A stretch of 64,000 bases of DNA, taken from the NCBI RefSeq assembly GCF_040938485.1, contig NW_027270892.1, positions 1,922,001 through 1,986,000 on the forward strand, written 5' to 3'. This document shows, piece after piece, positions 26,601 through 63,792 of the stretch; position 1 is the first letter of the stretch, and each line of letters starts with the position of its first letter. Source of the DNA: Diadema antillarum. Its lineage: Eukaryota. The notes under the pieces are model-generated. The model did not search any database, was not told the DNA's origin, and saw only the letters and a program-made list of their open reading frames with translations. The translations under genes and the position numbers were made by a program.

Positions 26601-29600
26601 AAAATTTTTGCAAAGAAGCAATTAGATTTTTCACGAAAATGAACAATTTGGGGTAACATTAATGATTATGCAATGCTAGACAGCCATCTACAAGTTGTGT
26701 TGACATGTATCATGTACATGTTACTATGATGGTCACTTTAAATAGAGAATGCTCTTTGAATAAAACATTGTTGTTTTTCAACTGAATGGCCTATTATTGA
26801 TTAGAAAAGATAACAGCTCTAAAATACCATTGAACATTGTGTTTCATACCCTTTACATGGCCAGCAAAACCGTGGGGGCCGTGGGGGCTTGGGCCCCCAC
26901 ATTTTTTGTGCACAATACAAAGAAATGCATAAGGTGTTATCACTTTGGGCCCCCACAATTTTTTTAACCCGGAAGTACGTAAGTGGCACTAAATAGAAAT
27001 AGAGATCTTGAAGTGTGAGCCCGGTACCTAGGTTATGTTTTTCCACTGAGGACCTCTTTGTGTGTGTGTGTTTTTTTTTTGCTTGTCAGCTGAACAGTGA
27101 AAAACCCAGAAATGGAAGGGGAGAGATGAGCTGAGCCGAGGACCTTTTTTTTTTTTTGCTTGTTACATTGTAGCTCATGAAACCCAGAAGTGGGCCCCCA
27201 CACTTTTGAAAACGCTGGGTTAAGCCTGCATGTACAAACATGTATAACTAGACAAAACTGACATACACAAGTGTGTAACCATTGCATACTTGCCAACATT
27301 TTGAAATCCTGAAGAGGTAGATTTTGCGAGGGAGCGAAGCGACCAAGCCCGAGCACGCTTGCGCGCGAGGGGGGGGGGTGTGGGAGGGGGGTGTCCCCCC
27401 TCCCGCGGTGTGGACTTTTTTTGTTTTTCAATATCAAAATATGAGATTTGGTGCACGCTTTTTAACCTTTTTAAAGGATTCTTGGTATTGATTAAAAAAA
27501 AGCATATAATCCATGTAAATCTATGAACTATTTTGTAGACTATGAAAATAAAATCAGACATATTGGTAAATAACTTTTGTAGGCTAAGCATATCAATGTG
27601 AAAAATCAAACATATCGTTATCACAAGTTAGATATAAAAATACATGTACGTTTAATACAATCACGTACAATGTACGTACACGGCCGGCCGGCTGGGATCA
27701 TGCCACGCCGTATGCCGCATCGGCCGCACCACGCACACGTGAGCTACCAAAACATTACTATTAAAGCATGGTTCTAGCTACACGTACAATGTACACGTGT
27801 ACAGTAAGTCTTGCACGCACGTAGATATGATAGACTAGTGCGCCACTGCAGTGTGCATACATGTGTGCATATTAGAAGGCTGAATACGGCGTTTTTGAGA
27901 AACGAGTTCCTTGAAATTATTATTAGTATTCTAATTACAATGTACTACAATTTTTGTAGCTTATTTTAGGGAATCAACGCACAATGAAGGGAAAATATGA
28001 CTTCTATTTCATTTTATGGTAGGTTTGCTACTAAATCGGTAGATTGGAAGAGAAAATCGGTAGCCGGTCAAAATCTCTAAAAAAGCGGTGGTCTACCGCC
28101 CAAAGCGGTAGAGTTGGCAAGTATGCCATTGAGTCAAGGGAATATTAAAGGTTCTACTGTTGAATGGCCCTCTACACCAAGTCTTAGACTTTATATGACA
28201 TCATCATACAAACATGTACATACAGTAGGTATTTTAAATTCAGGTGGTGTCTAGGTAATGATTTTCCTGGAACCGAGTGTAAGCCGATTGCCTGCAATGC
28301 ATTTTGTGATAGAGCCCTTACGCCACAGTAATTGCTAATTTGTAATTGTATTTGTATACTGACTATGACTTCTGCTTTACAAAATTTCATTTGCATATGG
28401 GTAGCCATACTGTCCTGTACTAGACTCCCGTTTGTTCAAGCATACATCATATACAATATAATTATGTTCGTCGACTACTGTATTTCCTCGCGTCGCTATG
28501 CTACATTGAATCATTTAATACTAAAACGCCGTATCTGAGGCTGGTTACTCAGTATGCAGTAGGCCTAGGCAGGACGCCGTGCGTGTATGATGCGATTGAC
28601 ACACAAGTGCGTGTGTATCTGTTATCATCAGCTACCCGCGCGCGCGGTTCCTAACTACACACACCTTCCTATACTGAGTACCCAAGGAGGTACAGTGTAC
28701 TTGCCTAGTACCTCCTTGCTATACCATTATCACATGTACACGTTTAGCGCTTCAGATCTTACGTACCGAGTGTTCTCACGTTGCTGGCAACGTGATTGAT
28801 CGCGACTCCGCATAGCGCATGCGTAAAATGCAGACACAATTTCTACGCAGTGTACAGTATCCAGTAGTACGAACGTACAATACACAATACGTATGGATCG
28901 GCATCATAAACAAGTAGGTTTGAAGCATGAGACCGGCCATGCCAAAGTACAGGTGCAGGTACGAGCGAGCGCGAGCACTTGTACTTGCAAACATAATTCA
29001 CACTTCCAATTCTGGCTGGTACAATTTATAACAGAACCAGGCACTACAATTAACATGCCCATATAGTAAGCAGAATCATCCCCTTCGCATAAATGCAGTG
29101 CACAGTTACACATGTATTTAATACTTGGCTTGATAATCGTAACAGTGCTGAATCGTAATCGTATCTCATCAAACTCCGATCATCAACTTGAATGGCGGTA
29201 ATATTTAATCAACACAGTAACAGTCGATCAGTCTACAGCTGTATGTAGATACGATTGAGCTCATTTGCTATTTGCTTCGCTCTCCTGCTCTTTACTTGGC
29301 ATTCACCTTACCAAAATTAGACTCGGATTAAAAAAAAAGGATAAAACAATTAATAAAGGTCCTATAGATCTATAACGTGAAACATTACTAAAAGGGAATT
29401 GAGAAGCTACTTAGTACTGTAGATCTACCGTCAAAACGACAAACGTTATAACTTTAATAGCGTGTTGGACCTCAACCACCCGTCGCTGTAAATTTATAGA
29501 AGTCGCCCAACAACTGTCCAATGACAATACGAAATGTCATCTCTAACGTTAGCCCGACCAGACACTGTTACGCTATGCGAAAACAGAGTCTGACGAGCGC

Positions 29601-31523
29601 GGCATGCAGCCTCAAAGTGAGGAACCTCAATACAACTACAAAACTTAGGAAAATGTATACTTTTCTTCTTTACACAGAATACTTTACTCACGTTAAATGC
29701 ATGTTTCTATTACAAAAGAACAGTTTGCCACACTGGGTCCATGGAGACAACTTGCGAATAGTCCGAGGAAAAAATAAATGACACTTTCTACCGCAAATCC
29801 TGACCATCTCAGGTTCGTCGTTGCAGGATTCAAAATGGCGCATTGACCTCTGCGAATTATGCGCATGCGTGACCGGAAGTGCTCCAGAGCGAGCGCGCGG
29901 CGTGTGCGTTGAAAGTGTCAAACAAACCTTGGCGTCTGCTACAAAATTAACCGTGGTATGGAGCTCAATGCTCCTCGCCCGACCAGACGCCAGCCGCCGT
30001 CGTCAAGCCCAGTACAGTTTATAGCTGTATAGTGTTGTACTAGTATTCTAAACCGTGCTTCGCATTGCGTCTGCATGGTGGTCGACAGCAGGATGACAGT
30101 CAGCAGTTACCATGCTCCATGCCATGCCCCACGCCGTGCAACTTTGCATTTCCTGTAAAAACGCGTTCACGCCGAAAAATGGTGGTTTTTACAGACATAG
30201 AGTGACAGCAGTAGCGTCCCCACGGACGTTTACTGCTGTCTATCGAAAGCCACATCATTATCATCGGAACGCTTTCATTTGCAGGTCATGCTACAAGTTC
30301 CTGATCCCTAAAACGCGCCCTGTGAAACCCGCGAAGGCAGGGAGCAAACGGGGTCATCGGAGGACATTGAAAACTCCAAACCCACATGGTGAGGATAAAT
30401 ATCACGGAATTCTACTAGACCCGTGTGTCAAAACATGACGTTAATTCCAGACCCTATATATAATTGTCATGACGCAACCATTATCCCAAAGGGCGCATTT
30501 GCATTTCCGTCAACTGTTTCGATGCACATTATATGAATGTTTTTTTGAAATAGAATGAAAACAAAACAAATCTTCCTTGCCGAAGATGTAGGCCCTATTG
30601 CAAAAATTAATGAGAACTCTATCAAAACATGGGTTCACGCTTTTTTCAACACTAATTCTACTCGTATAGGGGGTCGTGAGCTCTTACGTTATTTCGCTTA
30701 GATATGAGCGCATCTCATTTCACGTTGTATGTCGAACTACACTGTACTCTCATTCAAGACGGTGGTAACGTGGATATTTCGCCCCATGATGAGACGGAAG
30801 GGGAGCCATCCAGCACTCCGTCAGCAAAGCGGCAAGCATTGTTCCCCACACCGGGTCCGCTTCTCCGTTCCCAAGATCGCCAGATGAACCCGCTATGCCC
30901 CGTTGTGCCAGGTATACTCAATACCTTAATTATTCCAGTACTAAGACATACTAAAATTAAGACCAGCAAACACCACCCCCCCCCCACACACACACTAAAA
31001 TAATAATGATAAAAAACAATATATGTATATTTTATGTATATAAATCAAAACATCCACACAATGTACCAAGACCGTGTAGGGGGAGTGCTTGCGCCCATTT
31101 TTTTCCTTTTAATTTTGTTTAAACAAAAAAAAAGGGGGGCGCGCACGATGCCCCCCCCCCCCCATCCGCTACTGCTCAGAAACAGATTTTCTTTTCCCTT
31201 GTTTATAAGACACAGTTTAAGTTACATTTATGCAAGAGAATTAACGTTCTAAGTCATTGTTCTCAAGCCATTTGTTATGGGGAATTCAATAACAATCAAA
31301 ATCACTTCTTGTGTATGTAAAAAATACTCTCAGAAGATAAAGATGTAACAATAACAAATAGAAGAGGTGGTAATAGGGCCTATATTATGAAAGAATATAG
31401 CACCTACCATATCTGCAGTTAAAGGGAACGCAAACCCAAAGAGTGATGTGGATGGAGTGAAAGCAGCATTATTAGTAAAACACGTCAGTGAAAGTTTGAG
31501 GAAAATATAACAATCGATGCAAT

Positions 31524-31569
<46 letters not shown>

Positions 31570-31878
31570 GAGAGTATTAAGGAGGCGGTAGACGTTGCTT
31601 AATTGAATCCTCACAAGTGATTTTACTTCAAGCTTTCGGGCTTTCTGCCCTTTGTCAAGACTGAGGACAAATCGGACAAAATACAAAACATGGATATCAT
31701 ATATACAAACAATAATGATCAAAACAATAGTAAAAATAATGATAATAATATTTTTGTATATGTAAATATACAATACTGTATATACAGAAGCAACGTCTAC
31801 CGCCTCCTTACTCTCGTTACACACATTCCAAAAAGATGCGACGACCCAGGGGTTCAGTAGCTGAAGACGCACGTCTCA

Positions 31879-31917
<39 letters not shown>

Positions 31918-34900
31918 AGTTTTGGTGTTGGAACCGCTGTTTGAGGAGATAAGAAAAGGTTATGACGTATGAGTGGACAACAAAATACAGAACATAATGA
32001 AAAATATTCAACAAAAATTCCCTTTTTAAGTACTATGAAAGAGCACTCCACTATTTACGCTTTCAGAAAGCAGGAAGAATAATTAATACCCATAACATAT
32101 GTCAGTACAGCAAGTTGATGGAATTTCTAATTTGCATGAAAACAAAATTGTGGGATTTTCTTTTAATTTCCTTATTTTGTTGTCTACTCATACGCCATAA
32201 CCTCTAGTAGTCTCCTCATCCAGCTGTTCCAACAACAAAACTTCAAAATGTGTTACTTTTGCATCGATTGTAAGATTTTCTTCTGATGTGTTCTATAATG
32301 CTACTGCTTTCGCTCAATCCACGTTGCTCTTTGGGTTTGCGTTCCCTTGAGCCTACACTAATCTCGTCATCAATTAGATGCAGCCTAGATGTAATTACCA
32401 GAATTGTAGGCCTTAATTGACAAGCGGTAGAAGGGTATCTTGAATTTTCCCGACTCTCTTCTTTAATTTCATTTCATGTATTTTATTTATTTTTTTGGTG
32501 GGGTGGGGGCAAGTTTCACAAGATACCTGTATTCTTTAATATGGACTACACATAATGTGTTTGTTGTTGAGAGAGTGATGTTCGCCCTAAGAAATAACGA
32601 TAGAAAAATCCTAGGAATGGCATCATTTTGGTCTTCGCTAGTTTTGATTATAGTAGACTAAGCGCCCAACGAGATAACAACATCGAGCTGTATGGTGCCA
32701 TTGTCGTTATTTTTGTTCTTGAGCTGAGATTAGTCTCCATTTAGGCACATACGATTTCCATAGCCCAGATCATACTGGCTAAAAGCGACAGTGATGCTGA
32801 AGGTTTGACATTAATGCTATTTGTCATCGAAAAGTCCGTGGCGTATCTGCAAATATCCTCACCTGATTTCGATCTTATACAGACCAAAGAAAACAGACAG
32901 TTTTCAATTCTATTGTCTGATCTACTATTAGCTATACGAAAGAAGCATCATCTAGCATCAAAGCGCATCAAGGCTTAAATTCGATAACATGTATAAAGAT
33001 GTATTTAGACATGTATTAAAAGTAGAAACATTACAGAATCAATCTAGACAGCTTATTGAAAATCGTTGTGAACATGCATAACAAACGCCAATTATCAATT
33101 TCACAACAGATGGCGAAATTGCCCACGAGAACGTAGGTCCGCCGACTTCACCTACAGCTCTTCTTCAAAGAAAACAAAAAGATGCCGGCGTGCAGACAAA
33201 CTATCCGCCCTCATCATTTCTTCCACACGATGGAGAGCAGTCACTCAGCAGTGAACTGGACGATGATCTTCCTTGTCTACTACCTGAATGCACCGCCGGA
33301 CCAAAAACGCCGAAAGAGACGGCTATAGACTACATCGAAGTATCGAAGTATCGGCTTGCGTTTAGACTCTTATGTTTGAGTTACCCAGCGGCAAAGAAGG
33401 CACTGTCAACAGTGACGCAGGAAATTATAAAGGAAGAAGTAAGAGCACAAAATAAAAACAAAGTGCTACTGTATAGTCAAACAAATTTACATGCGTCTCA
33501 TTTTGATGAACATGCACAAGACAGCAATACTTATTCATTTTGCTCCAGTCGGCCATTTCTTTTCAGTCAAGAACATCCTTGTCATGGAAATTACATTCAT
33601 AATAATTGGAATTCTGTTTTACGTGAATTGGGTGATTACAAGATTGTAATGATTCTAACTTCGGTCATGTCATTATTTGGCTGCAATTTAGTGAAAATGG
33701 TACTTGCCCTGCCGTTTGTTTGTATTTATCAGGTTGGTTTTTTTTTTTTGGACATGTTTTATAGATGTGGTAGGTTCCTACGTGGATGTAGTTTGTCTTA
33801 AAAACAAATACTTCACTTAATAGTTGATATAATAAGTCAGTAGTTCACAATGGCAGCTCCCATTCAGTATGCTTTCCATATTTTCACCGACGTCAATTTG
33901 CTTCTTCTTTTTTATTCTACATAGGTGAAATCCATGAAGCGAAACAACCACAAAAAGAGTGGTTTCAGCCAGCCAATATCATTGGAACGGGTTGAAGAAT
34001 TCCGTTGGGAGAAACTCCTTGATGAAACGGAAAAGGTCATGCCGGTTGCCATTAGCTCCATGTCAGCCATGATGCCATCTATCAAAGAGGTCAAGGCAAA
34101 CAACGGAAAAATCAAAGGAAAGAAAGGCGCAAAGAGGTAAAGAAGAAACGATAGACAAATCATATAAACATGTAATTTAGTGTGGATAACAAATTTGTTA
34201 TTATTATTCGCAAGGTCAGTTTTAATTGCGTTAGCAAAATCATTATGTTTATGTATATTATTATATATTTGTGTGTGTGTGTGATAGGGAAAAAATGATT
34301 CTTGCATGGATATGCCAAAAAACCGCTTGCTCGAGATATAAAATTGCAAAGCACCTTCCAAATGAATTCGTTATAAAGTGGTGACACATTAAATGAATTA
34401 TTCAGAGTTTCAGAAGGCGCAATGAAGGATGAAAACTGTGACATGCCGTTTCATATTCTGCATTATCTCGATGCACATACAAATAGTTGTTATATTCGCA
34501 ACTTGCTGTTCTCTACTTTGCCCCTAACCAGAATTTTCAAGTAATTATACTCTTTTGCGAATTGATCGCCTCTTGTACATAGTTATTAGTAAACGAAATG
34601 TAAATTAGGGAAAAGAAAACAATAAGGATATAAACAGAATGGGGTGCAATATGAATATTATTTAATGAGAACTTGAAATGCGCGGACGTGAGTCCCCAAA
34701 GCGCAGTGCAAAAAAAAATATATATATATAAAAAAAAATAACTTCAAAATTTCGAATCTTCACATTCATGCATAAGAAATAAACAATAGGAGGAACAAAA
34801 TAACTTTTGTTTATCCACCAAGGTGTGTTTCTGACGATGAAGCCAAGGTATTCATTACTCGACGACTGGGTCAAATGGTAGCAATCGGAATGTTCTCGCA

Positions 34901-37900
34901 GGCACCACGCATATTCAAGTTTGTGCAGACATGCATGGGCATCGAGCTATGGCGGCAAGGAGTGTCCCAGAAGGTGTTCAAGACACTGAATCATAGTGGT
35001 ATCACCATCAACGCAAATACCGTGAGGTTACACGTGGATGTTGTCGCGCAAAATCATGACCAGCAGCTGAAAGAGTGGAAGAAGACGGTCGAGGTGATGC
35101 GCTCGTGTGTTCCATTATTTTACACTCTTGTTTCTAATTTAGACCCAATTGTTTTACAGCTAATGTTAAACCAGGGAAGTTGAAAGGTAACGTTGAGAAT
35201 GCACTCAGGAATCCCATAGGAAATACTGAACAAATAGCAACGTACATCTACCTCAATTCTTGGAACTTTGGACTACAAGTACTACTAAAAGGGGCCCAAA
35301 AAATAATAACGTAGAATACTAGAATGAAAAGTTTGGTATTGATCAAAATTACCATCCTTAGTGGATAGATAATGATATATTACGCTCTGCCTATATTTTC
35401 CCCGTTGTATTTTACCAGTTGCATGTTGAAAATATTGTTATTGCGTGTTTCAAGACCTCCTGTCCATGCGTTACGTGATCCACTGACTCAACTCATGCAC
35501 ATACATGGTATTTGTTAATTTACTCCACAAAAGAAAAGTGAAAAAAAGGGGAAAAAAATGTATTACTTTTAATTGGCAAAATATCCCTCCACACAGGAAT
35601 TGCCAACGAAGACAACTCGCCGGAAGCTAAAATTCAGTCCTTCTGCTCCAACGTTTGGGCTGTGCATTGATAACGTGCAGAAGGGAACAGAATCAAAGCA
35701 CCAAGGACTGACACGGGGTAACAAGTTCTTCCTGCAAACCATGTGCTATGCGGCCAAAGACAGGGTGCCACCTCCGATGTCTTCATCCACAGTGCTGGAT
35801 GCCGAAACCCTGGACCCCTTTGTGTTCTTGCCCTCTCCGGACGTCATGGCCAGGCACCGAATGCGCCTAGTGGATGTAGTGGCCAGCATCATGGGGAAGC
35901 ATATGACGTACTTGGAGGATTTATCACGCCACCTCCCCATCACCCAAGAGCATGAAGAGAGTGCCGCTATGTCGAAAAAGTCTGAAATGGTAAGGGAATT
36001 TGTGGAGGCCCAAGCTCCATCGATATGATTGTTGATATCAATAAATTGAGAAAATTTCCATAAGTTATTAATCAAGGTTTCAATATTGGTTAAAAGAAGA
36101 ATCAAAACATAGCTTTCTGGCATACATTAAAAGACAAGCTATTCCTCGATTTAAACAGTAGGACGGCGTGCCCCTCAACCACAATAAGAAAATTGTCCGA
36201 AGATAAATTTAAACTGTCAATTCACTTTTAAAATTGAAAAATTATATGACAATACTTTGAGGGGACTCATATATTTGCCATTCGGGTAATGTAAACGTCA
36301 ATTTTATCCCTGTCCTAGGTGACATTGGGTGTTGTAAACGCTAATCCCAGCACAACACAAGGGATGGTAACAGTGTTACAGCATCTGCAGCAGTATGTTC
36401 CCGAGAAGAGGGGAAGCCCCATTCAGACCCTCGTCAGCGGCGACGGATTGACCATCGAGCGCATCCTACATGCTCAGCGGGCGAGATCGAATGGAGAGAA
36501 CTGGAAGGCCCGACTGGATGCATTCACTCCGGCACCCCAGGAATTTCACAAGGAAATTCTACTTCTGCAGGTATGTCTAACTCTCGTGAAATAAAAGCTA
36601 TGAAAGAATAGACACGAACAACTGATTAATTTCACCATGTTATTTATTATCTTCGCTCCATCCAAGCGAAGAATGATTACGTAAAGCCTGCATTGTACTG
36701 ATAGTGTACAAAGTTGTTTGGCCTATGTTTGTTTTGACACATTATGATCAAAATGTTATTGGTACTACAAAAGCTGCTTCATAACAATGTTTTCTGAAAT
36801 TTTTCTTTCGAATCAAAATATAGACGTTACCATAAGAACTGCTTCCCACATTATTGATAGACAGATATTTCGTGTCAGGTCCATTACAAGTAATACTCCG
36901 ATCTACGTTACACAACTTTGATATCATCAGTTTGTCTGTACTATGTGACATTTCCCAGAGACAATCGAGAAAGGACGAATGAATAATACCGAGAACAATT
37001 ATGTCTGTTCTTTAACGAACACCGGCCACGCGTTGATACAGCTACGAAGCATGATACACAAACAGATGTTAAAGTCATTATATAGTTTTGGTAGAGAACT
37101 AACTTCAAGTTTCTAACATTTTTTTGGGCGACAAAATGCGAAGCAAATTTTGGAATATAAAAGAGCATGTAATTCCAAGAGAATTTACGTGTTTTTTCAT
37201 GAAAATTGGTCATTATATGACTGAGTCACCACAAACAGCAATCCTAATAAAAGGTGGGATGGCTTTGTTCTACGTTGTTTTTGGATGTCTCAGCCATTCC
37301 AAAACAGATTTTGATCGAATGAACTTTCAATTCCTCTTAGACGTAGATATACTCTGTACTCTTTCGTGAAGTGCATGATTTCTCGATATCTCGCAAAAAG
37401 GTGAAAGCCCAATCCTCAGTTCCACCAATATGCCAAACCATCCCTTAACAGAGTGACTGTTTCTGCTAACTAATTATTCAAAAGAACCTATCATTTCAAC
37501 ATAATTTCCTCCTTGTCAAGGACTCAAACAACGTCTTCTTTCGAGGGAAAAGCATTTCTGCCAAAGGGACAATCGCACAGTTGAAGTACGATTACAACCA
37601 CAACTCTTTCCGGAAAGACGTTATGCAAAATGTTCAGCATACCTGGGATATGTATGAGGTAAGACGTTTCATAATTAGCAATTTTAGAGTGGAATGTAGG
37701 GATGACAAGACAGGGATAGGTCACAACCTGTATCTATAGTGTGTAATAGAGGGTGACAGTGTATTTTTGCTCTAATTTCAAAGAAAATGAAACATAATGA
37801 AATGGATGCAACGGAATTTATATAGTATACTCAGTATAGTAAAGCGAGATTAATGATGCATAGGGCAGAAAATGGGGAATCACAAATTTAATGAATGGTA

Positions 37901-40900
37901 GCATCATATTGCATTGTGAATGCATGATATACGCGTAAAGTATATTCATTCTTGTGCCAATTTTCGTGCTGAACAGTTCGTGACAGAGGGATACACGCTC
38001 CTTTGCGCCCTTAAGTTCTGTGGAACATCGTCTCTAAATGAGGTCCCTTACACTTTTCCGGTTGACGGCAGCAAAATGGAACAGCTACAGTGGGTCAAGG
38101 GTGTGGCTCAACAAGTCGTGGACTTCGTCTACCATGAACCAGACAAGTCATCAATACAAGTTGCAGCAGAGGCGTACAAAGATGACGTGGGAGAAGAAAC
38201 AGAGGATGCTCTGGCGTACTGTCACTGTAAAACTGGTTAGTACCCTATGGCAGTACTCCTACTATAAATCACTTCCCCACCATGATTTAAGGTTTGCTTG
38301 TTTTGTCATGTAACGTTAAGTTATCATTCAGAATAAGGATAAACAACCCCCCGCCCCCCCCAAAAAAAAAAACAACAACAACAAACAAACAAACAAACGA
38401 ACTGGTTAGTACCCTATGGCAGTACTCCTACTATAAATCACTTCCCCACCATGATTCAAGGTTTGCTTGTTTTGTCATGTAACGTTAAGTTATTCAGAAT
38501 AAGGATAAACAACCCCCCGCCCCCCCCAAAAAAAAACAAAACAAAACAAAACAAAAACAAAACAAAACCAAAAACAAACGAACGAACAAGCAAACAAAAC
38601 AAAACAAAATTGAAAAAAAGAAAAAAATTCCATGGCGACCGCAATACATCCACTACATATTTATTTATTTATTTATTTATTTGTTTATTCATTCATTTTT
38701 GTACAATACACACTGCCATTGCCACAGGAAGGCGACAATCTCAAATGAACGGCAAATAAACAATATCCGGTACACTATGATATTGTACACAGATTTTCGT
38801 GACATTGTTGAGCGGCATAATATGGAAACAGACAAATCTAATTACATGTATTCTCACTTGACCGTTCTGACTGCATGTATATGATCCCAAACTTTCCATG
38901 TATAATCGCTGAGTGGTAATGCATGTATGAATTCCAAGTCCAACAGGACTGATAAGCGTATATATTCATTTTTTTTTTCAGTATATGGAATAGCGTCACC
39001 CGAGCATAAGCTAATCCAATTTCGATACTTTGTTAACATTGACGTAAGGGCTCAAAACTGCTCTTAGATACATGAACGGTACATTCAGGTACCGCATTGT
39101 AGGCATAAAGCGGAAAAATGAGAGGAAACAAGTAAATGTGCTCAGGAGTGTACTCTTAGTGTAAATATTTCGATTGAACCGCAGTTTGCATAGTTTACAG
39201 AAAAATTCATGTATAATTCCGGAATAAGAACATACATGTACTTTGAAACTTACATCATATCGACATAGAAAATCTGGTAATTGTTCATGTTTCTAATCTT
39301 CTCGCCGATTTTGATTATGTGACATGTGCATGAATCCTTTCTCAATTATCTGTGTAGAGAAAGACGAGGAGATGGTTCAGTGCTGCAGTTATGCATGCCA
39401 CAAAGCCTGGTTTCATCTGGGTTGTGTCGGATTAGCATCTGCTCCAGATGACGACTGGTACTGCAGCGCCGATTGTGAAAGCAGTCCAAGCTACGTCTAC
39501 TGTGTGTGTAAGCTGAAAGTTGATCCAGAAGGCGGTACAAGAATGGTACAGTGTGCTTTGCAGCGGAATTGCAAGGGTCATGAATGGTATCACTACAGAT
39601 GCGTTGGGCTCCAGGTCACCGATGTACTACCGGGTGAGAAGAATTATGTTCGTGCATAATAAATGTGGAGATCTATGGACGGTGCCAACGATTTATTTAC
39701 AAGCATGAGCTGTTTGTCTTGCGAACTGAATCAGGTAGAAAAATTCTCTCATTACAGCTTATTATCAAATATGCGATAAGTATTCAAGGATGGTGTTGTA
39801 ACACGCTTGATCTAGTACCCATTAAGGCCTATGGAAAAAGGTAAATACTATGTCATTTCACTGTTTCCTGAGACGTGATTTTTTATTACTGTAGACAAAT
39901 GGTACTGTGGAGAAGCATGTGCCCTTGACTCTGAAGACGACGACCATGTGCTGAATCACAGTAAGGCTATCACTCTGGAGGGACTGCGTCATCAGGCAAG
40001 ACGAGCTGCAGTGCGGGCTGGAAATGGACCCGTCATGGTTGACGACTGGAAAATTGATCTCCTATCGTTCTGGTCAAAGAGGCATCCGAAATACCTCATC
40101 AACGCCCACTACTTCCTGGCATGTGAGTCTAGCACAATGTTTCTGTAATAATATAATACAGACAGACATATATTTGAGATATTCAATCACCAGAGGAAAT
40201 AACAGTTCATTTCGGAGAAACTACAGGCCGAGTCTCTCGAGCAGAGATTGTTTTTGGAAAATGCAGATGACTGTCAAAGAGTATTTCAATCAGATTTTAA
40301 TATCTAGAATTTCATTCATTTTTTTTATATCTATTCCAGGTGTAGGAGGATTTGCTCCCCAAAACACACGGACTAGCTTGATCTGGAATAGGGTGATCAA
40401 CGTTGCTGGAAGACGTGGAGGAAACATTGGAATGGACCTTGCCACTGAGCACATCAACTTGGAGTACAAAGGTATTACGTGGTAGATGTGGGAAAATATG
40501 TGAAAATATGTGTGATTAATAATGTGTAATTATTTTTCTACCGATAGTGATACGCGATCTTTCACCATGGAGACGGTACTGTGAGCTGCGTGCATGATTT
40601 CGAATCAAATAGGTTAGTGAGAAGAGTCGTCTTGCCGGTATCGGTCATTTTTGCAAAAGCATGCCCGATTCTGAAACGATCCTTTCCTATCCTTTTCACC
40701 TTCCGCTCCCCGGCAACTGATGAAGAGGGCGGTGTTTTGGGACTAACCTGTCTTTCAATTTCAGTTTTGTTTTGTTTTTGTTTTGTTTTGCTAACTCCTG
40801 ACGGGGTGTCGCCGTTTATTTTGGCCAATGTTTTGGTATTTCATTTATATATAATTATATATATATATATATATATATATACAAACACTATATAATATGA

Positions 40901-43900
40901 ACATATTTATTCATTAATTTATGCATGTATTTCATATTCACCTTTTTTTTTGCAGAGACGATAAACCATTGTCGTGGAAATGTGACAGAGAGGCATGCCG
41001 ACCGATGTGCCAAGATGTCTGGCCCTTTCGGTCGGTACCTGGACGATATGTTCAGTGACGCCGGGATCGTGTCTATGAAAACCCCATCACGAAAAAGGGC
41101 AGAAAACCTGTACAAGCAGGACGTGCTGTCATTCGTCAGTGAGAATCAGCGAGCTGCGCTATTTGAGTACTTGCCCTTCAGAGAACACGATGGTTTCGAG
41201 GGTTTTGATGGCAGACATGTTGTGAAAGCCCCGTGTAAGCTTGGACAGAAGTTGAAGGCCCTTTCCAGAAGAATGGATGCACAACGCCGAACTGTACAAT
41301 TGTGTCGGAATACAGACTCTCACTAGGAAAGACCATGTTAGTGATTCACGGTGTCACAAACTGAGCAGCAGGGACCCACTTGCTCTCTCGTCTGCTCCAT
41401 GCCTGGTACAAACAATGCTTTTAATACAGACTGCCGGATGCAGCATGACAATTTGAGGATGTCGCTCATCTCATCATCAAGCCATCTCTTGTTGACGGAG
41501 CCTGGTGGAAGGTACATGATTGCTCTCCCCCGTCTTCCGTCACGGCCACAGCGTCCCGTCTCCTGCCAGTAACTAAGGACGTCGCTTGGCGGTCCCCAGT
41601 GAATGACAGTGTCCACATCCGGAACATCCACTCCAAGCCCGAAGGCAATGGTTGCGATCACGCAACGAAGTGTAGAGCCCTTGGAAGAAAAGTTCATGCT
41701 TATTCTTTCCTGACTGTCTATGTCCGTGGACGCATGAAACATTTCAGAGAGTCTGTTGTGCACAGTACATGGCTGTTCAGAACCTGTAGAGTGTCCATCT
41801 TTCTGCAGTGATTCATTGATCCAGAGATAAAGTTCACTGACGTGGTCGATATGTCTGTAGGAACAAAACAAAATGATGCCATGTGTCAACATTAAAGCAA
41901 TCTATTTTCTTCACATTTTCTAATTATCTTTTCAAACATAAATTATTGGTTATGAAGAAAATCTAATTTTAAGAAGAAACTGATTTTTCTTTCAAAGTTG
42001 ATTTTCAAAAGATGTAGGGCCTCAGGTGTAGGTCTTCATGCATTACGGTTCTCGTTTGCTTTATAGAAATTGTGGGTACCATATTAATGTATTTTCTGTT
42101 TATCCAAGGTAATGTGCCAAGTATACATGTATATTGGGTATTGGTATGGTCTTCATAATTTAGTTGACGTCGATAAAACGTTTAAAAACTATTTCGGCAC
42201 TCATCTTTAAACACCGCGCCACCAGAATTGATAAGTCATGCAAACAAAAATCGAAGGCTCGATTTTTAGTTTACTTACCGAGCATATATGATGGTTTTCC
42301 GGGCCCTGGTTCCTTTTTGCTTCAGTTCCTCGATGTACCATCCTAGAGCCTCTTGCTTATTGGGGACTCGAGCTATTTCTAGGTGAATGTTTGGCCTGCA
42401 ATATTTGATAAATGGTATATTTATGAGATGTAATATAGGTGTTCGTGAAACAAGTCTGAAGAAAATCATATTTCATAATTACTGTGATTTACAGCGTAAT
42501 TGACTGGCATTCAAATGTATCTATCGGAATCAAATCTCCCTTCAAGTTTACCAGGCCGAGTTCTTGCAGTGGTAAGTTTTCTCCCTTTAAAGTAAATTAT
42601 AATTTATATCAATATAAGTTATAGCTCATAGGAAAACGGGTTGTAATTTACTCTAAACCCAGATCTGGATCATGAGAACGAATGATGACTCCTTTTCATA
42701 TCAGGGAAAATATAATCGACCGGGCGAAAAAGAATTACATATAGCTTGTAGGCCTACATGTATTCGGATACATGAATTTCACAAACTACATAAAGACGGA
42801 AATAAATATTTGGAGAAATGAGTCGTTGTTTGTAGCTTACGGTATTAAAGGGAAGTAGTTGGCTAACAATTTAGAGCCGCGTGATAAAAACACACCGTGT
42901 GCATGTGTTCCCGCTTCAAAAACAACAATACATTGCATTAGGCACAACTGAGCCCACATGTTTTCCTTATGTATTACACAGGCGGCGGTATATGATAGGT
43001 GGGAGAAACCTTTCTTTTACCAGTTACTACGTTGGTCGTGCAGGTTTTATATGCTCCACGGGACATGTGTCGCTGACGTTCAACTTCAGTTATCTGTCTT
43101 AACATCGTGTTCGTGATGAGTGTTATCTGTGCACCGAAAACATTACATTATCATAGCTATAGTGTATCCACTACCAGTAGTAGGAGGATTTTGTTGTGCA
43201 CATACGTTTGTGATTACGTCACCTGCAAGTATACAGCCATGGCGAAAGAAAAAATAAATGGGGTATAAAATGCGGAAGTTCCACGTGTTGTTTTTTTCTA
43301 AAATCCGTGTCATCGCGCATTGAATTGTTGTTGCTGTTGTGTTTTTGTTTGCGTCTCAAAACCACCGTCTGATGACCACAGATGATTTAGTCATAGGTGA
43401 AAGTTGACATATTGGTATAAGCACAGCAGAAATAAGAATCGTTCATCTTGCGCATAACTCTTTAGCTGATTTTAGCGGGTATATGTCTTGAAGAGGAGAA
43501 GCGAGCAAAAGCCTTATACATGAAAGAGAAATATCGGCTGGTATTAATGCGATCGAAGTATCGGGAAAAGGGGAGGCGTCTGTCCACTTGAGGGCTATGA
43601 GCGGAGTAATTTACATGTTATATTTTTGGGACACTGATACATTTCATTTCAATGGATATAGTAGTGTTTCAAACTGACATTCGATGCCTCACATGCATGT
43701 GACTTGATCCCTGAGAACGAAAAAAAAAAGTATTAAAGGATTTTTTTTTTACTTCTGTTCATTACCAATAGATTTATGACATTCCGCGGATGTAACTAGT
43801 ATGAATGAATGAGGCGTCGATGTTAATAAATACCTGTCTGGAGATAAAGCGACGATTTTCACTTCCTCTCGTCGGAGACTCAGATTTTCGCACACAGCAG

Positions 43901-45903
43901 TAACCATTCTGTCAGTGCATGTAGCGGACAGCATTAAGACAGGGCATGTTAGTCTTGATCGCAAAGTATGAACTCTCAGGTACTCCTCTCTGAATGTCAA
44001 TCCCCTGCACATACACGACAGTTAGTCATAGATAGGAAGAACAGTACAATAACAATATTTTACTTCCGTTAAGAAAAAAGAAAGAAAGAAAGATTATGTC
44101 CGTATACAAGACAGAATGTAAACGGGTCTGATGATTTATCGCGTGTTTATTTCTGTAATGACTGTAGTGTGTACATGCAGTTACAACAAACATATAGTTA
44201 TAATCAAAAATCCGGCGATCAGTTAAATGTCCTAGCCATTTATCAATCAGAGCGCTAATAGTACAGAATATGTTCTATATAATTCTTTCATGTAGTATGC
44301 GTAGTTCCTTGCTTAGTTTGGTCACTATAGGCCCATCCTGTGCAAAATTCTAATGTCAAACATCTAGCAAGAAGTGAATCTCAGAAAGCATAACTACAGT
44401 TCCCTCTCACGTGCGCTTGTTTGAAATTTTGATATGCTATAAGGTCATCATCTAACAAAAAAATAAAAAAATAAACAGTTGCATGTTCGACCTCCCCTAT
44501 ATCAAATCAAATTTTAGCTAAATAATAACTATTTCGACATTCGCTACCCCAAAATCACCCAAAGAACGTGGATAGAAAACTTTCCTTTAAATCAGGGCAC
44601 GGTATACAGCCGATAGTTCTTCGGCAGCTGCGTGTTTTAATTATCTAGTCGTCCATATTCTGATTAGGGCCTGTCCCGACATGTCCATGTCCGGATAGGA
44701 GAGGTCGGACTGTATATTCTTCAATCTTTTACCTCAGCTGAAAATATGGAAATACTTTATTTCAGTTTAAATTGGGGTGTCTAGGACTCAGGCATTATGT
44801 TCCCATAACATCGCAAAACCATCTCATTTGATTCATTATACATGTATCTGCAATAAGTATGTTCATCGAGTACGTTCAATTATGGTACAGTTTGAAAAAT
44901 TAATCCAGTTAAGTTGTCAGCAGTTTTATGTATAACATTGCACTTTGGAAGGTATAACGTATAAACTTGCCATTTTGTCAGACAGTGAACTTCGTCAAGT
45001 ACAAGCAAGCAAATCCTTTCTTGGAACTTCCGCACCCATTTCCACCATTTCGGTGACATGATGGCCTCTGGGGACGTGAAAATGAGATCTCTCTCTCCGT
45101 TCATTAGATCTGATGGGTATATAAAGCGAGAAGTTGAAAGTAGAACATAATTCAAACATGCTAATCTACCATCAACTTATATCCCGATTTAGTGCTCATT
45201 AAGAAACGATTATCTTTATAACGTACACTGTATAATGGATACATAACGATTTCAACATTGATATTACGTGTTTTCACTTTCAAAACATATCGATAGATTT
45301 TTCTAACCCGAACTGATATCTAGTTGCTGATTATGATCATTCTATACGAGAGACAGTTTGATTCACCTATCCATTGCGGAGACTAAAGGCTGATTCCGGA
45401 TTAAACTTGTTCGACAAGAGTACAACTGTTTTGTACAGGCATTACGGGAAGAAGCGAGATACTCTTTGTGTGTATATCATACATGGGAAAGGGGGGGGGG
45501 ACAAAGGGTGCAAATTGTCAACAATTATTAGAAAATCGAGAGCAGACTGGGATCAATGAATTTGTTCAAGAACACAGGAAACTTCCGGTAGTTTTCTGAA
45601 TTACCATTTTCTGTCAACCGGTCCATATCCATCCCGGAATGACCGAGAATGGCCGCAGTTCTTATTCCATGTGACTCCCACCTTCGCATCTGATCCATCA
45701 TTAGACTTTTTAGCGGACTGACCACGAGGGTCATGTGTCTTGTCTCTGGATTCAACTGTCAAAAAAAGAAAAAAAAATCTACAATGAGCGACAATGACAT
45801 TGAGATACTGTGACTTTTCATATTGCTGTTATATTTCTATACATTAAAAGTAATGTTAAAATATATAGGCCTATATGTCCATATGACTCGTTATAGGGAT
45901 AAA

Positions 45904-45951
<48 letters not shown>

Positions 45952-46672
45952 GCACCTAGTAGTACAAACTGTTTTCTACTTTATACCTCCCATACACAGC
46001 TCCTTTCCACAGCGGTCCTTCCTAGGATTTATCGAACCAGTCACATTGTCACTTTCATAATGCTTATCTTCTTTTTTCCCCTCTATGATAAATATACGCT
46101 TGATTATATATAATTCTATGGGATTTTTCTCAATACGAATTAAAAGGGGGATCAGCACACAAATAGATTGATAAGTTTGTATCATCATTCAAATTAGCAT
46201 GCCATAAAAATTTATATCATAATGTATAATAGGTCTATTAATGTAATGAATGAATTATGTTGCCACTGTAGTGAATTAAGGTTTTGTAGGTAGGCCCTTT
46301 GGGCTTGTCAGATATTCAAGACCTAAAGACCTTTCCCTTATTCATTCATCCGTATTTCAGTAATTCAATGAGGAAATAATGATAACCAATAATCATCGAC
46401 TGCGAGAGCGCGAGGTGTTTATCAAGCCGAGCCGCAACTTGCCAAAGGCTGATAGACACCTCAAGGATCACCGATCGAGGTTATGTTAGATTTTATCCAT
46501 TACCCGAGAAATAGATGATTATTTGCTTTATATCCAACATCGATTTACAAAGTCGAACGAGATATGATTAAAGAAAAATATTCCATCAACCGTGCGGAAT
46601 ATGTCTACAACTCAGGCATGACAGGTTGCACCGTAAAACCACGGCAATCTGATAAATTAGAGTAGCGTCAAT

Positions 46673-46706
<34 letters not shown>

Positions 46707-47731
46707 AGAGTACACACAAAAAAAACAACAACGACAAATAAACAAAACAACACCTGCCTTGTCCATGAGTGGCCCAAAGAGAACGTACGGGATACTTTTC
46801 CCGTATGCGGTAGGCAAAATGGCCAAGGTGTGACTTCCTCCTGCCAGACTGTCGATTATCTCCACTTGTTTTGTTTTGAGTACGAAACTTTCACCGAACA
46901 TTTCGGTCGCTACTTTACGAATACAAGACTGATTATCCATGTCTAAAATGAGAAGAGTATGTGAGAAGTATACACAAAGGACGCAGGACAAGATGAAGAA
47001 GAAGAAGAAGAAGAAGAAGACAAGGGACCGGAGTGGACAGGTGTACGTGTACGCTTGAGAACGTATTACACAACCTATGGTATGACGTAAGTACTGCCTA
47101 ACGTCGTCTGCTTGTGGAGAGATCTTATGCGTGCGTGCGCGGCTTGAGTGTAGCAGCACGGTCGGCAGCGCGACCTTTTGAAAGGGCATTCACATCACGT
47201 GACCACCCGATATCTGAATTTGGCCTGGCGTGAAAGATTGTGTACCGTGTGGACATGCTGGATATGATGATCAATTTCGGTAAGTTTCATTACGTACATT
47301 TGAATACTGATAGCATCAGATGTAGAGTAAATATTGAAGAGTGTACTCGATGAGTTTGAGGTGACAAAAATGATCGTAAGTATCAAAAGTCAAAGCTATC
47401 GTGATACGATTACGTCGCTCTCCTAGTGGTTGGTGGTCGCACTCGTACAGCCCTGTCGCGACGTACCATGTACAGCGACTGGGCTGTGTATAGTTACTCT
47501 AACGTTAACATTTATTTGTCTGGAACTTGTCTATTCCGACAATTTATTGGTCAAGGTGGTTGAAACAGAAGAAGGCACTTAGATTGCCGATTTTTTTTTC
47601 TTCGTCTCACCTTTTTTCGAATCATTGTTGCCCGATGGAGGCTGCAGAAAACTCGGATTTTCCAGTAACGATTTTAGGGTTATCCCACGAATGTCGCTCA
47701 AGCGCTCTTCCATTCCCTCCATTAGATCCAT
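23244..47731 (-). CDS. HLF: PAR-bZIP transcription factor (HLF/TEF/DBP/Pdp1 family), 308 aa; join(complement 47611-47731, 25610-25978, 23244-23680)
   Basis: Exon 1 reads [28 protein letters not shown] (PAR-family TLxxLLENP-like motif) with donor G|GTGAGA. Exon 2 has [32 protein letters not shown]. Exon 3 has the PAR + basic + zipper region [54 protein letters not shown]. All introns are GT-AG and phase 1/1; total 927 nt with TAG stop. The symbol stands for the single invertebrate family member. Confidence 0.93.
24395..24783. mobile_element. Non-autonomous element with 6-bp TSD (IS3EU-like), in HLF intron 2
   Basis: CAGGGATGCCAAGT / ACTTGGTAGCTCTG with ACAGTG on both sides. Confidence 0.7.
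25610..25978 (-). CDS. HLF: PAR-bZIP coding exon 2
   Basis: Acceptor TCTTAG|GC and donor G|GTATGT; contains the conserved [10 protein letters not shown]...[10 protein letters not shown] block. Confidence 0.93.
26856..27229. mobile_element. Diverged copy of the 599-1147 MITE family, in HLF intron 1
   Basis: Shares GGGCCCCCACA..TTTTTTAACCCGGAAGTACGTAAGTGGCACTAAA..GAGATCTTGAAGT and the right-end CACTTTTGAAAACGCTG; TSD not recognisable. Confidence 0.7.
27285..28125. mobile_element. Non-autonomous element with 13-bp TIR and 6-bp TSD (IS3EU-like), in HLF intron 1
   Basis: CATACTTGCCAAC / GTTGGCAAGTATG with CCATTG on both sides. Confidence 0.78.
29975..30109 (+). mobile_element. 135-bp diverged Academ-type miniature nested at the transposase start codon
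   Basis: Starts TCGCCCGACCAGACGC and ends CAGTTA; flanks CAATGCTCC / CCATGCTCC (8/9). The last 25 nt match the big element's right end at 14/25 positions without gaps. Confidence 0.6.
30112..41326 (+). CDS. Academ transposase with two PHD fingers, ~1115 aa; join(30112-30388, 30702-30911, 33110-33438, 33925-34136, 34823-35093, 35597-35989, 36319-36570, 37521-37658, 37977-38235, 39358-39633, 39895-40122, 40340-40471, 40956-41326)
   Basis: All 12 introns are GT-AG with matching phases; 3348 nt, no internal stop. N-terminal CxxC...CxxC. Putative catalytic motifs CIDNV (exon 6), SGDGLTIER (exon 7) and DLATEHIN (exon 12). PHD1 [30 protein letters not shown]; PHD2 [28 protein letters not shown]. 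The first two exons are least certain (alternative ATG 30124, alternative acceptor 30759). Confidence 0.85.
31423..32347. mobile_element. Kolobok-like non-autonomous element in transposase intron 2, carrying a nested MITE
   Basis: TTAA|AGGGAACGCAAACCCAAAGAG ... CTCTTTGGGTTTGCGTTCCCT|TGAG; same family as 62276-62827. Confidence 0.7.
31567..31818. mobile_element. MITE with ~33-bp TIRs nested in the Kolobok-like copy
   Basis: AACGAGAGTATTAAGGAGGCGGTAGACGTTGCTT / AAGCAACGTCTACCGCCTCCTTACTCTCGTT; next to a (TA)n run. Confidence 0.7.
38231..38560. repeat. 169-bp tandem duplication starting at the exon 9 donor of the transposase gene
   Basis: AACTGGTTAGTACCCTATGGCAGTACTCC... occurs at 38231 and 38400. 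Confidence 0.85.
41338..46940 (-). CDS. RecQ-like superfamily-2 DNA helicase of the AcademH element, 425 aa; join(complement 46758-46940, 45605-45755, 44971-45109, 43834-44004, 42279-42395, 41338-41854); possible extra upstream coding exon 47075-47189
   Basis: Motifs I LPTAYGKS, Ia [69 protein letters not shown], and a C-terminal Cys cluster (CCSVC). 1278 nt uninterrupted when two GC-AG introns are used. Confidence 0.9.
46388..46522. mobile_element. Small palindromic repeat in a helicase intron (10-bp terminal IR plus internal hairpin); family unassigned
   Basis: AATAATCATC / GATGATTATT ends; internal GAGGTGTTTATCAAGCC ... GGCTGATAGACACCTC. Confidence 0.45.
47611..47731 (-). CDS. HLF: PAR-bZIP coding exon 1 (40 codons + 1 nt)
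   Basis: ATG at 47731-47729 with an in-frame upstream stop; [10 protein letters not shown] motif; phase-1 donor matches the phase-1 acceptor at 25979-25980. Confidence 0.88.
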
Positions 47732-62275: not shown

Positions 62276-62827
62276 AGGGAACCAAAACTCCATGAGCAAT
62301 GTGGATTGAGAGAAAGCAACATTATTAGAACACATAATGAAAGTTTGAGGAAAATTGGACAATCGATGCAAAAGTTATGAATTTTTAAAGTTTTGGTGCA
62401 GTAATCACTGGATAAGGAGACTACTTCAGTTTATGACATCATGTGTGGACAACAATATAAAGAGAATATAGAGAAAATTCAACATGCTTTTACTTTTCTA
62501 GCGTAATGAAAGAGCACTTGACTAACCTCTTTCAGAAAGCAGGGGGAATGATATTACCCTTAACATATGTCAGTAACAAGTTGATGGAATATGTAATTTT
62601 CATGAAAAACGAATTTTTGTGGAATTCTTCTTTTATTTTCTATATATTGTTGTCCACACATGACATAATGAACTCTAGTAGTCTCCTTATCCAGTCATTA
62701 CAACACCAAAAGTTTAAAAATTCTTAACTTTTGCATCGATTGTCCGATTTACCTCAAACTTTCACCTGTGTTCTGCTAATGTTGCTGCTTTCATTCAATC
62801 CACATTTCTCGTGGGGTTTGGTTTCCT
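62276..62827. mobile_element. TTAA-flanked Kolobok-like non-autonomous element
   Basis: TTAA|AGGGAACCAAAAC ... GTTTGGTTTCCT|TTAA; internal similarity to 31423-32347. Confidence 0.72.
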
Positions 62828-63201
62828 TTAAGGTGAATTCACTCAGTATAGTTTTCGAAATCAACGTGTTAGCTAAGTTACTATTTAATAATGTTTCAAG
62901 TATATTAAAAAATATCTAATAATGTTTCAAGTATATTAAAAAGAACAATATTGGAGCTACATGGTCCTAAATGCCACTAGTATCACTGATATTGTGTAAA
63001 ACTGAAGCTTCAAAAACAAACCAGGCTTAAAAGTGGTTGTTATTATACCCTGGTAATTGTTCAAAGAGGTACAAAAGCTGTGAGTGAGGAGTGAGCAGAT
63101 CTACGTTACTTGATTAAATCCATAGATAGAAAGGTTTCAGCAAAAGTGTAATAGCGCGTTGAAATGAGCTGATGCTATTTACTTGGTGTGATCTCAGTTA
63201 A

Positions 63202-63606: not shown

Positions 63607-63792
63607 TTAACCTGTCATTGTACGTGACTAAGCCACTGATAAGTGTTTTACTTAAAACTGTAAGGTTGTCTGTTATTTTGTCTTTCCCTCTTTCTTTGAT
63701 GGAATACCCTGTATCAAGAAACAATTCGCTGTGTGTTTGACACGATATCAGCTACTTAGTGAGGTTTTGTATAGCATGTGAACAGGGTATTA

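What the first reader, a model, noticed from the sequence alone, without database searches (positions are those of the whole stretch)
38200..39930. Tandem ING-like PHD fingers plus three start-proximal insertions suggest an H3K4me3-guided transposon
Seen: both PHDs keep the Tyr (YCxC), Met (MVQC) and Trp (WFH/WYH) residues. All three family insertions here are next to a 5' gene end: ~110 nt past the HLF exon 1 donor, 62 nt past the ATOX1 exon 1 donor, and exactly on the transposase ATG. Known: in ING-family PHDs these residues form the H3K4me3 aromatic cage, and the RAG2 PHD steers RAG1 to H3K4me3 chromatin. Inference: this transposase may target active promoters by reading H3K4me3, a convergent parallel to RAG. 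The sample is only three sites in one window.
Basis: partly seen in the sequence, partly recalled or inferred. Interest (0 to 1): 0.88.

Follow-up and report, generated by a model that had tools for sequence, protein, structure and literature searches.

The report
Transposon enzyme with histone-reader fingers
An intact 18-kb jumping gene in a sea urchin (Diadema antillarum) encodes a cut-and-paste enzyme carrying two zinc fingers that look like readers of the active-gene histone mark H3K4me3; the element type is already described, and the idea that the fingers steer insertion to gene starts remains plausible but unproven.

Summary
Window 29550-47496 is an intact AcademH-type DNA transposon with a perfect 9-bp TSD. 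It lies in intron 1 of an HLF-like gene of Diadema antillarum. It carries a multi-exon DUF6589 transposase and a convergent DEAD/Helicase_C helicase.

Two PHD fingers are split over three exons (38217-38235, 39358-39633, 39895-39920). By sequence and predicted fold they resemble ING-family H3K4me3 readers most closely. The Tyr/Met/Trp triad is present in both fingers. In PHD2 it is unchanged in all 11 transposase-linked relatives aligned, from echinoderms, amphioxus and fish.

- 105 nt past the HLF exon-1 donor
- 51 nt (plus TSD) past the ATOX1 exon-1 donor
- on the putative transposase ATG

A PHD-bearing AcademH sublineage was already published (Kojima 2020, recalled; paper not readable here). 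This scan also noted AcademH/AcademHP copies elsewhere in this genome.

H3K4me3-guided targeting is only partly supported. No binding or genome-wide test was possible. A clean insertion of a sister family sits 68 nt past the donor of an internal exon. "Just past a 5' splice site" therefore fits the few sites better than "start-proximal".

Interest is moderate.

The parts
29550..47496 (+). Full-length AcademH-type DNA transposon (17,947 bp). 5' end TAGCCCGACCAGAC; 3' end ...TACAGCGACTGGGCTGTGTATAGTTA; imperfect, offset terminal repeat.
29541..29549 (.). Left copy of the 9-bp target-site duplication CTCTAACGT
47497..47505 (.). Right copy of the 9-bp target-site duplication CTCTAACGT
30111..41326 (+). 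Multi-exon transposase gene (Pfam DUF6589). The NCBI model P0152 (1022 aa) covers 30704-41326. A further conserved 5' exon at 30111-30388 matches the N-termini of Diadema paralogues.
38217..38235 (+). PHD1 first part: cage Tyr (38217-38219) and the first Cys-x-Cys. The exon ends at 38235 (phase 1).
39358..39633 (+). Exon holding the rest of PHD1 (Met 39372-39374, Trp 39408-39410, last Cys 39474-39476) and most of PHD2 (Tyr 39498-39500, Met 39543-39545, Glu-Trp 39582-39587).
39895..39920 (+). End of PHD2 (DKWYCGEAC, last zinc ligands). The exon continues into the DUF6589 C-terminal part.
41338..46940 (-). Convergent helicase gene of the element (NCBI model 425 aa, DEAD + Helicase_C)
29975..30108 (+). 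134-bp putative non-autonomous family member nested in the element. TSD CAATGCTCC / CCATGCTCC at 29966-29974 and 30109-30117. The target contains the first ATG of transposase exon 1.
55157..55260 (+). 104-bp non-autonomous derivative sharing 19 nt of the 5' end and 18 nt of the 3' subterminus. TSD TTTGCTGCC / TCTGCTGCC at 55148-55156 and 55261-55269. Lies in ATOX1-like intron 1.
47611..47730 (-). Coding part of exon 1 of the HLF-like PAR-bZIP host gene (ATG at 47730, donor after 47611). The element lies 105 nt into its intron 1.
55084..55096 (+). Inferred coding part of ATOX1-like exon 1 (ATG GCT GCA CAG | GT). HMA-domain exons follow near 56.4 and 58.7 kb.

Best explanation
This is an intact, recently inserted member of the PHD-bearing lineage of AcademH DNA transposons.

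Architecture: its transposase has an RNase H-like DDE core. The motif-level candidates for the catalytic residues, in P0152 numbering, are D365 in CIDNV, D513 in SGDGL and E893 in ATEHIN. Two ING-type PHD fingers (residues 682-788) lie in the long insertion between the second Asp and the Glu.

Proposed mechanism: at least PHD2, and probably PHD1 in this copy, binds the histone H3 tail methylated at Lys4 through a Tyr/Met/Trp pocket. The transpososome is thereby held on, or switched on at, nucleosomes of transcribed 5' gene regions. New copies then land preferentially just downstream of first exons.

Shown: the element, its mobility, the finger type and the positions of the sites. Inferred: H3K4me3 binding and its role in target choice.

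My odds: AcademH-PHD transposon 0.95; methyl-lysine reading by the fingers about 0.6; reading determines the insertion site about 0.35.
For: Element and mobility:
- Perfect 9-bp TSD and family termini.
- DUF6589 hits, plus DEAD/Helicase_C in the convergent gene.
- A sister family has four copies of about 20 kb that are 98-99.7% identical, with 9-bp TSDs.

Finger type and conservation:
- ING-type fingers by sequence and by fold.
- All ten long hits of the PHD exon are DUF6589 proteins with the same insert. They come from sea urchins, starfish, amphioxus and fish.
- The PHD2 Tyr/Met/Trp triad is unchanged in 11 of 11 transposase-linked sequences. PHD1 has Trp in 10 of 11 and Met or Leu in 11 of 11.
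- Across 149 cluster representatives, the PHD1 Trp is kept in 89%.

Core fold: the best matches are P element transposase (Z 7.4), retroviral integrase cores (Z about 6) and Hermes (Z 5.8). The matches span model residues about 356-547 and about 887-906.

Sites: two host-gene insertions lie 51 and 105 nt past first-exon donors, and one lies on the element's own start codon. By my rough arithmetic, about 1% of the non-element window lies within 110 nt of a first-exon donor, so two independent hits give about 1e-4. This is a post hoc estimate.
Against: - No binding data exist.
- The PHD1 cage Tyr is replaced by C, N, L or G in four of 11 relatives. In the window, PHD1 has Cys and Ala where ING fingers have the two H3R2-binding acidic residues (the ING roles are from memory of the 2G6Q and 2JMJ papers).
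- The sister-family copy L006, with clean TSD TGTGGGCCC, is in an internal intron after Q_salvage profile position 108 of 285. It is at least about 1 kb from the start codon.
- Two L. variegatus copies have no annotated 5' end within 1.4 kb of their left ends.
- Only three sites lie in the window, found by a reader who was studying the exons, so ascertainment bias is likely.
- 5'-end preference is common in transposons that have no reader domain.
Confidence: 0.4

Rival explanations
1. The fingers do read methylated H3K4 but do not choose the site. They gate or stimulate catalysis, much as H3K4me3 binding by RAG2 stimulates RAG1. Alternatively they merely give access to chromatin. On this view the 5' bias comes from open, transcribed DNA, as it does for many cut-and-paste elements.
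For: The fingers are embedded in the insertion between catalytic residues, a position suited to allosteric coupling. The L006 site is not start-proximal. The TSDs show a sequence bias of their own: CC at positions 8-9 in 6 of 8 sites or half-sites.
Against: The distances to the upstream splice donor are tight (51, 68 and 105 nt). That is tighter than generic open-chromatin preference would predict, although the sample is tiny.
Confidence: 0.25
2. The PHD pair is not a methyl-lysine reader. It is a structural zinc module, or it binds DNA (as the PHD-like cysteine-rich domain of piggyBac binds its terminal repeats). It might instead bind unmodified H3, or a partner such as the element's helicase.
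For: The PHD1 Tyr is not conserved and its H3R2-binding acidic residues are missing. In more distant short hits, the PHD2 Trp is replaced in about a third. The piggyBac precedent is from memory.
Against: The closest relatives by sequence and by fold are all proven H3K4me3 readers. The full triad of PHD2 is invariant in every transposase-linked sequence aligned. This is hard to explain without a pocket function.
Confidence: 0.2
3. The clustering of sites near 5' exons is chance, ascertainment or retention bias, and says nothing about targeting.
For: There are three sites in one window. One of them (MITE A) is a weak family member nested in the element itself. The added loci gave one clean counter-example to 'start-proximal' and several flanks that cannot be interpreted.
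Against: All three verified host-gene sites, in two families, lie within 110 nt after an exon donor. Such zones cover only a few percent of the flanking DNA.
Confidence: 0.15

Closest known systems
AcademH DNA transposons, PHD-bearing animal sublineage (Kojima 2020, Mob DNA 11:15; recalled from the abstract, paper not held)
   Same: A transposase plus a separate helicase gene, 9-bp TSD, and a PHD finger inside the transposase. The distribution also matches: invertebrate deuterostomes, with remnants in fish.
   Different: Nothing structural. What this report adds:
- the two fingers are ING-type;
- the pocket residues are conserved, above all in PHD2;
- the pair lies between the second catalytic Asp and the Glu;
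- insertion-site positions for two Diadema families.
ING/Yng PHD fingers (ING1-5, Yng1/2, Pho23; e.g. PDB 2G6Q, 2JMJ, 9M4S)
   Same: C4HC3 ligands, the same spacing in PHD1, and Tyr/Met/Trp at the pocket positions. Sequence identity is 36-50%, with RMSD about 2 A over about 50 residues.
   Different: The fingers are tandem and embedded in a transposase, not at the C-terminus of a chromatin-complex subunit. PHD1 lacks the two acidic H3R2 contacts. PHD2 has longer loops and keeps one of the two contacts.
RAG1/RAG2 recombinase (Transib-derived); the RAG2 PHD binds H3K4me3
   Same: A DDE cut-and-paste enzyme coupled to a PHD finger with a Tyr/Met/Trp methyl-lysine pocket. It is a possible model for tethering and allosteric activation (established knowledge).
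   Different: In RAG the finger is on a separate subunit and is not ING-like. Here it is inside the catalytic polypeptide, and the transposase superfamily is different. Function here is untested.
Chromoviruses (Ty3/gypsy integrases with a chromodomain) and other tethered integrators (Ty5-Sir4, MLV-BET, HIV-LEDGF)
   Same: The concept of a mobile element choosing sites through a chromatin reader or tether.
   Different: Those are retroelements, and they read other marks (H3K9me, acetyl-lysine or H3K36me3 through host factors).
piggyBac C-terminal cysteine-rich (PHD-like) domain
   Same: A PHD-like zinc module in a DNA transposase.
   Different: It binds transposon-end DNA and has no ING-like pocket triad. 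It serves here as the precedent for the non-reader rival.

Membership tests
AcademH DNA transposon | Academ-type DDE transposase | tested here: met
   Pfam DUF6589 hits on exons (E 5.7e-10) and on P0152. RNase H-like core: P element transposase Z 7.4, integrase cores Z about 6, Hermes Z 5.8 (middling Z). That DUF6589 equals the Academ transposase is my inference, not a database statement.
AcademH DNA transposon | Helicase gene carried by the element | tested here: met
   Helicase_C at E 4.7e-13. The NCBI model has 425 aa with DEAD + Helicase_C and lies inside the TSD-bounded element.
AcademH DNA transposon | 9- or 10-bp target-site duplication | tested here: met
   CTCTAACGT on both sides. The MITEs have 8/9 TSDs. 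The sister family has TGTGGGCCC and CTCTAGACC.
AcademH DNA transposon | Terminal inverted repeats | tested here: inconclusive
   Only an imperfect, offset match links the 5' end (TAGCCCGACCAGAC) to the 3' subterminus (reverse complement CAGCCCAGTCGCTG). The sister family has TAACC at both ends.
AcademH, PHD sublineage | PHD finger within the transposase | tested here: met
   Two fingers at P0152 682-788. All ten long relatives have the same insert in DUF6589.
ING-type H3K4me3-reading PHD finger | C4HC3 zinc ligands and PHD fold closest to ING | tested here: met
   Ligands are invariant. The top 18 Foldseek PDB rows are ING-family fingers, with target-normalised TM-score 0.45-0.82, about 0.8 for the crystal structures. 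Best sequence matches are Yng1, ING1/3/4 and AtING2.
ING-type H3K4me3-reading PHD finger | Pocket residues Tyr, Met and Trp | tested here: met
   Present in both window fingers. In PHD2 they are kept in 11 of 11 transposase-linked sequences. In PHD1, Trp is kept in 10 of 11, Met or Leu in 11 of 11, and an aromatic at the Tyr position in 7 of 11.
ING-type H3K4me3-reading PHD finger | Two acidic residues that grip H3R2 | tested here: not met
   PHD1 has Cys and Ala at these positions. PHD2 keeps only the Glu before the Trp. Residue roles are taken from memory of the ING2 and Yng1 structures.
ING-type H3K4me3-reading PHD finger | Measured methyl-dependent binding of H3K4me3 | not testable with these tools
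   Needs peptide binding assays.
   Two host sites and one self site are at 5' ends. One sister-family site is in an internal intron. No genome-wide census, no ChIP and no mutants were available.

The most novel reading that the evidence does not exclude
PHD-bearing AcademH transposases integrate within roughly the first 100 nt of introns, just 3' of 5' splice sites. Verified distances are 51, 68 and 105 nt; possible ones are 23 and 40 nt. The proposed cause is that their embedded tandem ING-type fingers read the H3K4 methylation that peaks at the first exon-intron boundary of transcribed genes. Outside RAG, this would be the first DNA transposase with a built-in histone-mark reader that sets the integration site. 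It would also be a natural promoter- or exon-trapping vector.
Probability: 0.3. Interest if true: 0.8.

Novelty: new member of a known kind. Interest (0 to 1): 0.5.

Why it matters
If the fingers really bind H3K4me3 and bias integration, AcademH would give a second, independent case of a cut-and-paste enzyme coupled to this mark. That bears on how RAG acquired chromatin control. It would explain how a low-copy element survives in gene-rich DNA by landing in introns of active genes. It could also offer a self-contained, chromatin-directed integration tool. The intact Diadema copies (this 18-kb element, and a 20-kb sister family whose copies are 98-99.7% identical) make the idea directly testable. 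If the idea is false, this is simply one more copy of a transposon lineage described in 2020.

Tried and rejected
- **Literature.** Kojima 2020 could not be read. Literature searches found no accessible text on the function of the AcademH PHD. Whether H3K4me3 targeting was already proposed is therefore unknown to me.
- **RNA evidence.** No RNA run was listed. Splicing rests on identity with the NCBI model.
- **Domesticated host gene.** Rejected, because of the perfect TSD, the MITE derivatives and the near-identical multi-copy sister family.
- **Other Diadema paralogues.** P0001/L002 and P0153/L003 have gene spans of 27-53 kb with repeated exons and no shared termini. They could not be used as insertion sites.
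- **L. variegatus copies.** L008 and L009 gave only left ends, more than 33 kb of element, and no annotated 5' gene end within 1.4 kb of the left ends.
- **Sister-family copies.** L004, L005 and L007 have exchanged or missing TSDs, so their flanks are only half-sites.
- **Foldseek of the full-length model.** It gave nothing significant for the core. VIA-align gave only middling Z values.
- **Further family copies.** None were found in about 300 kb of additional Diadema and Lytechinus loci.

Full report
**What is in the window.**

The window matches Diadema antillarum assembly GCA_040938485.1, contig JBFRCO010000004.1. Locus L001 equals window 20704-51326. NCBI gene models there are:
- a bZIP gene of 308 aa on the minus strand (window 23244-47731);
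- a DUF6589 protein, P0152, of 1022 aa on the plus strand (30704-41326);
- a DEAD/Helicase_C protein of 425 aa on the minus strand (41338-46940).

**The element.**

The motif TAGCCCGACCAGAC occurs three times on the plus strand, against 0.13 expected. The copy at 29550 is preceded by CTCTAACGT. The same 9-mer follows ...TATAGTTA at 47497. So 29550-47496 (17,947 bp) is one element with a perfect TSD. It encloses both the DUF6589 gene and the convergent helicase gene.

The termini are only imperfectly and asymmetrically inverted.

A 104-bp derivative at 55157-55260 shares 19 nt of the 5' end and 18 nt of the 3' subterminus, and has an 8/9 TSD. A 134-bp sequence at 29975-30108 shares 13/14 nt of the 5' end and the terminal AGTTA, and also has an 8/9 TSD.

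The element thus has a helicase, a 9-bp TSD, a PHD in the transposase, and relatives in echinoderms, amphioxus and fish. This fits the AcademH lineage and its PHD sublineage as I recall them from the abstract of Kojima 2020. That paper is not held here. Other first-stage notes of this scan also call this and other loci of the genome AcademH or AcademHP.

**The fingers.**

The reading frame ends at 38235 (ACT G|GT). It resumes at 39358 after an AG, ends at 39633 (CCG G|GT) and resumes at 39895. The spliced product is identical over 133 of 133 residues to P0152.
- PHD1 runs from Y682 to C727.
- PHD2 runs from Y735 to C788.

Evidence that both are ING-type:
- Against PDB sequences, PHD1 is closest to Yng1 (E 2.6e-9), then ING1, ING3 and ING4.
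- PHD2 is closest to Arabidopsis ING2, which was solved with H3K4me3 (E 6e-8).
- An AF2 model of P0152 674-800, built with 15 relatives, has mean pLDDT 78.5.
- Of its 21 best Foldseek PDB rows, 19 (including the top 18) are ING-family fingers. Ranks 19 and 22 are AF10 PZP and PHF7. Target-normalised TM-scores are about 0.8 and RMSD about 2 A for the crystal structures.

**Conservation.**

A search of 1.84 billion cluster representatives with the PHD exon gave 345 hits. All ten long hits are DUF6589 proteins with the tandem fingers inserted in the DUF6589 domain. They come from Diadema, Strongylocentrotus, Lytechinus, Acanthaster, Patiria, Branchiostoma and two fishes.

In the 11 transposase-linked sequences aligned:
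- the PHD2 Tyr, Met and Trp are unchanged in all 11, and the Glu before the Trp in 9;
- PHD1 keeps Trp in 10 and Met or Leu in all 11;
- the PHD1 Tyr position is aromatic in only 7.

In the window copy, PHD1 also has Cys and Ala where ING fingers carry the two acidic residues that hold H3R2. PHD2 is therefore the stronger candidate reader.

**Place in the enzyme.**

A full-length AF2 model (pLDDT 64; core blocks 70-90) shows strands at 360-367, 387-394, 471-477, 508-512 and 540-544, and a helix at 887-904. VIA-align finds P element transposase (Z 7.4, model 340-906), retroviral integrase cores (Z about 6) and Hermes (Z 5.8).

These Z values are middling. They do agree on an RNase H-like core with a large insertion that contains the fingers.

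The catalytic candidates are CIDNV, SGDGL and ATEHIN. They are motif-level inference only.

**The sites.**

- **HLF-like gene.** Exon 1 starts at 47730 and ends at 47611 before GTGAGA. The TSD begins 105 nt later.
- **ATOX1-like gene.** The HMA exons lie near 56.4 and 58.7 kb. The only sensible first exon is ATG GCT GCA CAG|GTATGT at 55084-55096, which joins in frame to KYEFKVEMTCGGC. The TSD starts 51 nt after that donor.
- **The nested 134-bp element.** Its target includes the first ATG of an exon whose product is 44% identical to the N-terminus of a D. setosum paralogue.

**More sites.**

A sister family (P0005; about 20.07 kb; ends TAACCGCAGCAGC...GACGGGGTTA) has four copies in D. antillarum that are 98-99.7% identical.
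- **L006.** It has a clean TSD (TGTGGGCCC). It lies 68 nt after the donor of an internal Q_salvage exon that covers Pfam profile positions 59-108 of 285. At least one further coding exon lies upstream inside the locus, and the start of the gene lies beyond it. This site is donor-proximal but not start-proximal.
- **L004 and L007.** The left flank of L004 and the right flank of L007 carry the same 9-mer, CTCTAGACC. They lie about 170 kb apart on one contig, in opposite orientation. This suggests recombination between copies.
- **L005.** It has no TSD.
- **Unverified motifs.** Two of these half-sites have GTAAGT motifs 23 and 40 nt before the target, but I could not show that exons end there.
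- **Chimeric gene models.** Several NCBI models start or continue inside the elements.

**Assessment.**

The anatomical claim is solid, and the element is of a published kind. The functional claim rests on homology of the fingers and a handful of sites.

The sites are clearly non-random with respect to exon ends. They do not separate three possibilities: reading of H3K4me3, general preference for transcribed open chromatin, or a splice-site-linked feature. Binding assays and a genome-wide census are cheap and decisive.

The N run at 48240-48454 was left as it is.

Noticed in passing
window 51-105 nt after exon donors; L006:29415-29492: All three verified host-gene insertions of PHD-bearing AcademH elements lie shortly after a 5' splice site. 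The distances from the donor to the TSD are 105, 51 and 68 nt. One of the three follows an internal exon. GTAAGT motifs lie 23 and 40 nt before the targets at L005:6692 and L004:26816 (minus strand).
   Followed up: partly
TSDs in window, L004-L007: Target duplications end in CC in 6 of 8 sites or half-sites: TYTGCTGCC, CMATGCTCC, TGTGGGCCC, CTCTAGACC, ATTAGGCCC and AGAGTAGCC. This hints at a sequence component of target choice.
   Followed up: no
L004:6689-6697 and L007:30595-30603: The left flank of one family-2 copy and the right flank of another carry the same 9-mer, CTCTAGACC. The copies are on the same contig, about 170 kb apart and inverted. This suggests an inversion by recombination between two copies, or a mis-assembly. 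L005 has no TSD at all.
   Followed up: partly
L004:6700-9460; L005:26360-26762; L007:10001-35285: Four NCBI gene models in these loci are chimeric with the elements:
- a LETM1-like model starts inside the left end;
- a WD40 (WDR26-like) model starts about 400 nt inside the right end;
- a PHO4 domain is fused to the transposase;
- a helicase model runs out into the flank.
The element ends may act as promoters or exon traps.
   Followed up: no
window 38229-38559: The intron that splits PHD1 opens with two tandem copies of about 166 bp. Each begins with the exon-end/donor sequence ACTG|GTTAGTACCC and ends in a C-run plus A-run. The second copy offers a duplicate donor near 38403. Similar C-run/A-run tails occur at 1425-1495 and 21440-21497.
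   Followed up: no
P0017 (Branchiostoma lanceolatum CAH1248614.1): This protein is named ING4 by its source. It has the tandem transposon-type PHD pair and a weak DUF6589 hit, so it is probably a mis-named AcademH transposase fragment.
   Followed up: partly
window 48240-48454: A 215-nt N run lies about 500 nt upstream of the HLF-like start codon, so the HLF promoter and TSS cannot be examined here.
   Followed up: no
window 7166-8361; 57360-58482; 62338-62764; 63197-63611: Unrelated repeats: 81/169-bp tandem arrays, about 155-bp tandem arrays, and two fold-back inverted repeats (86-94% complementary arms) that look like other MITEs.
   Followed up: no
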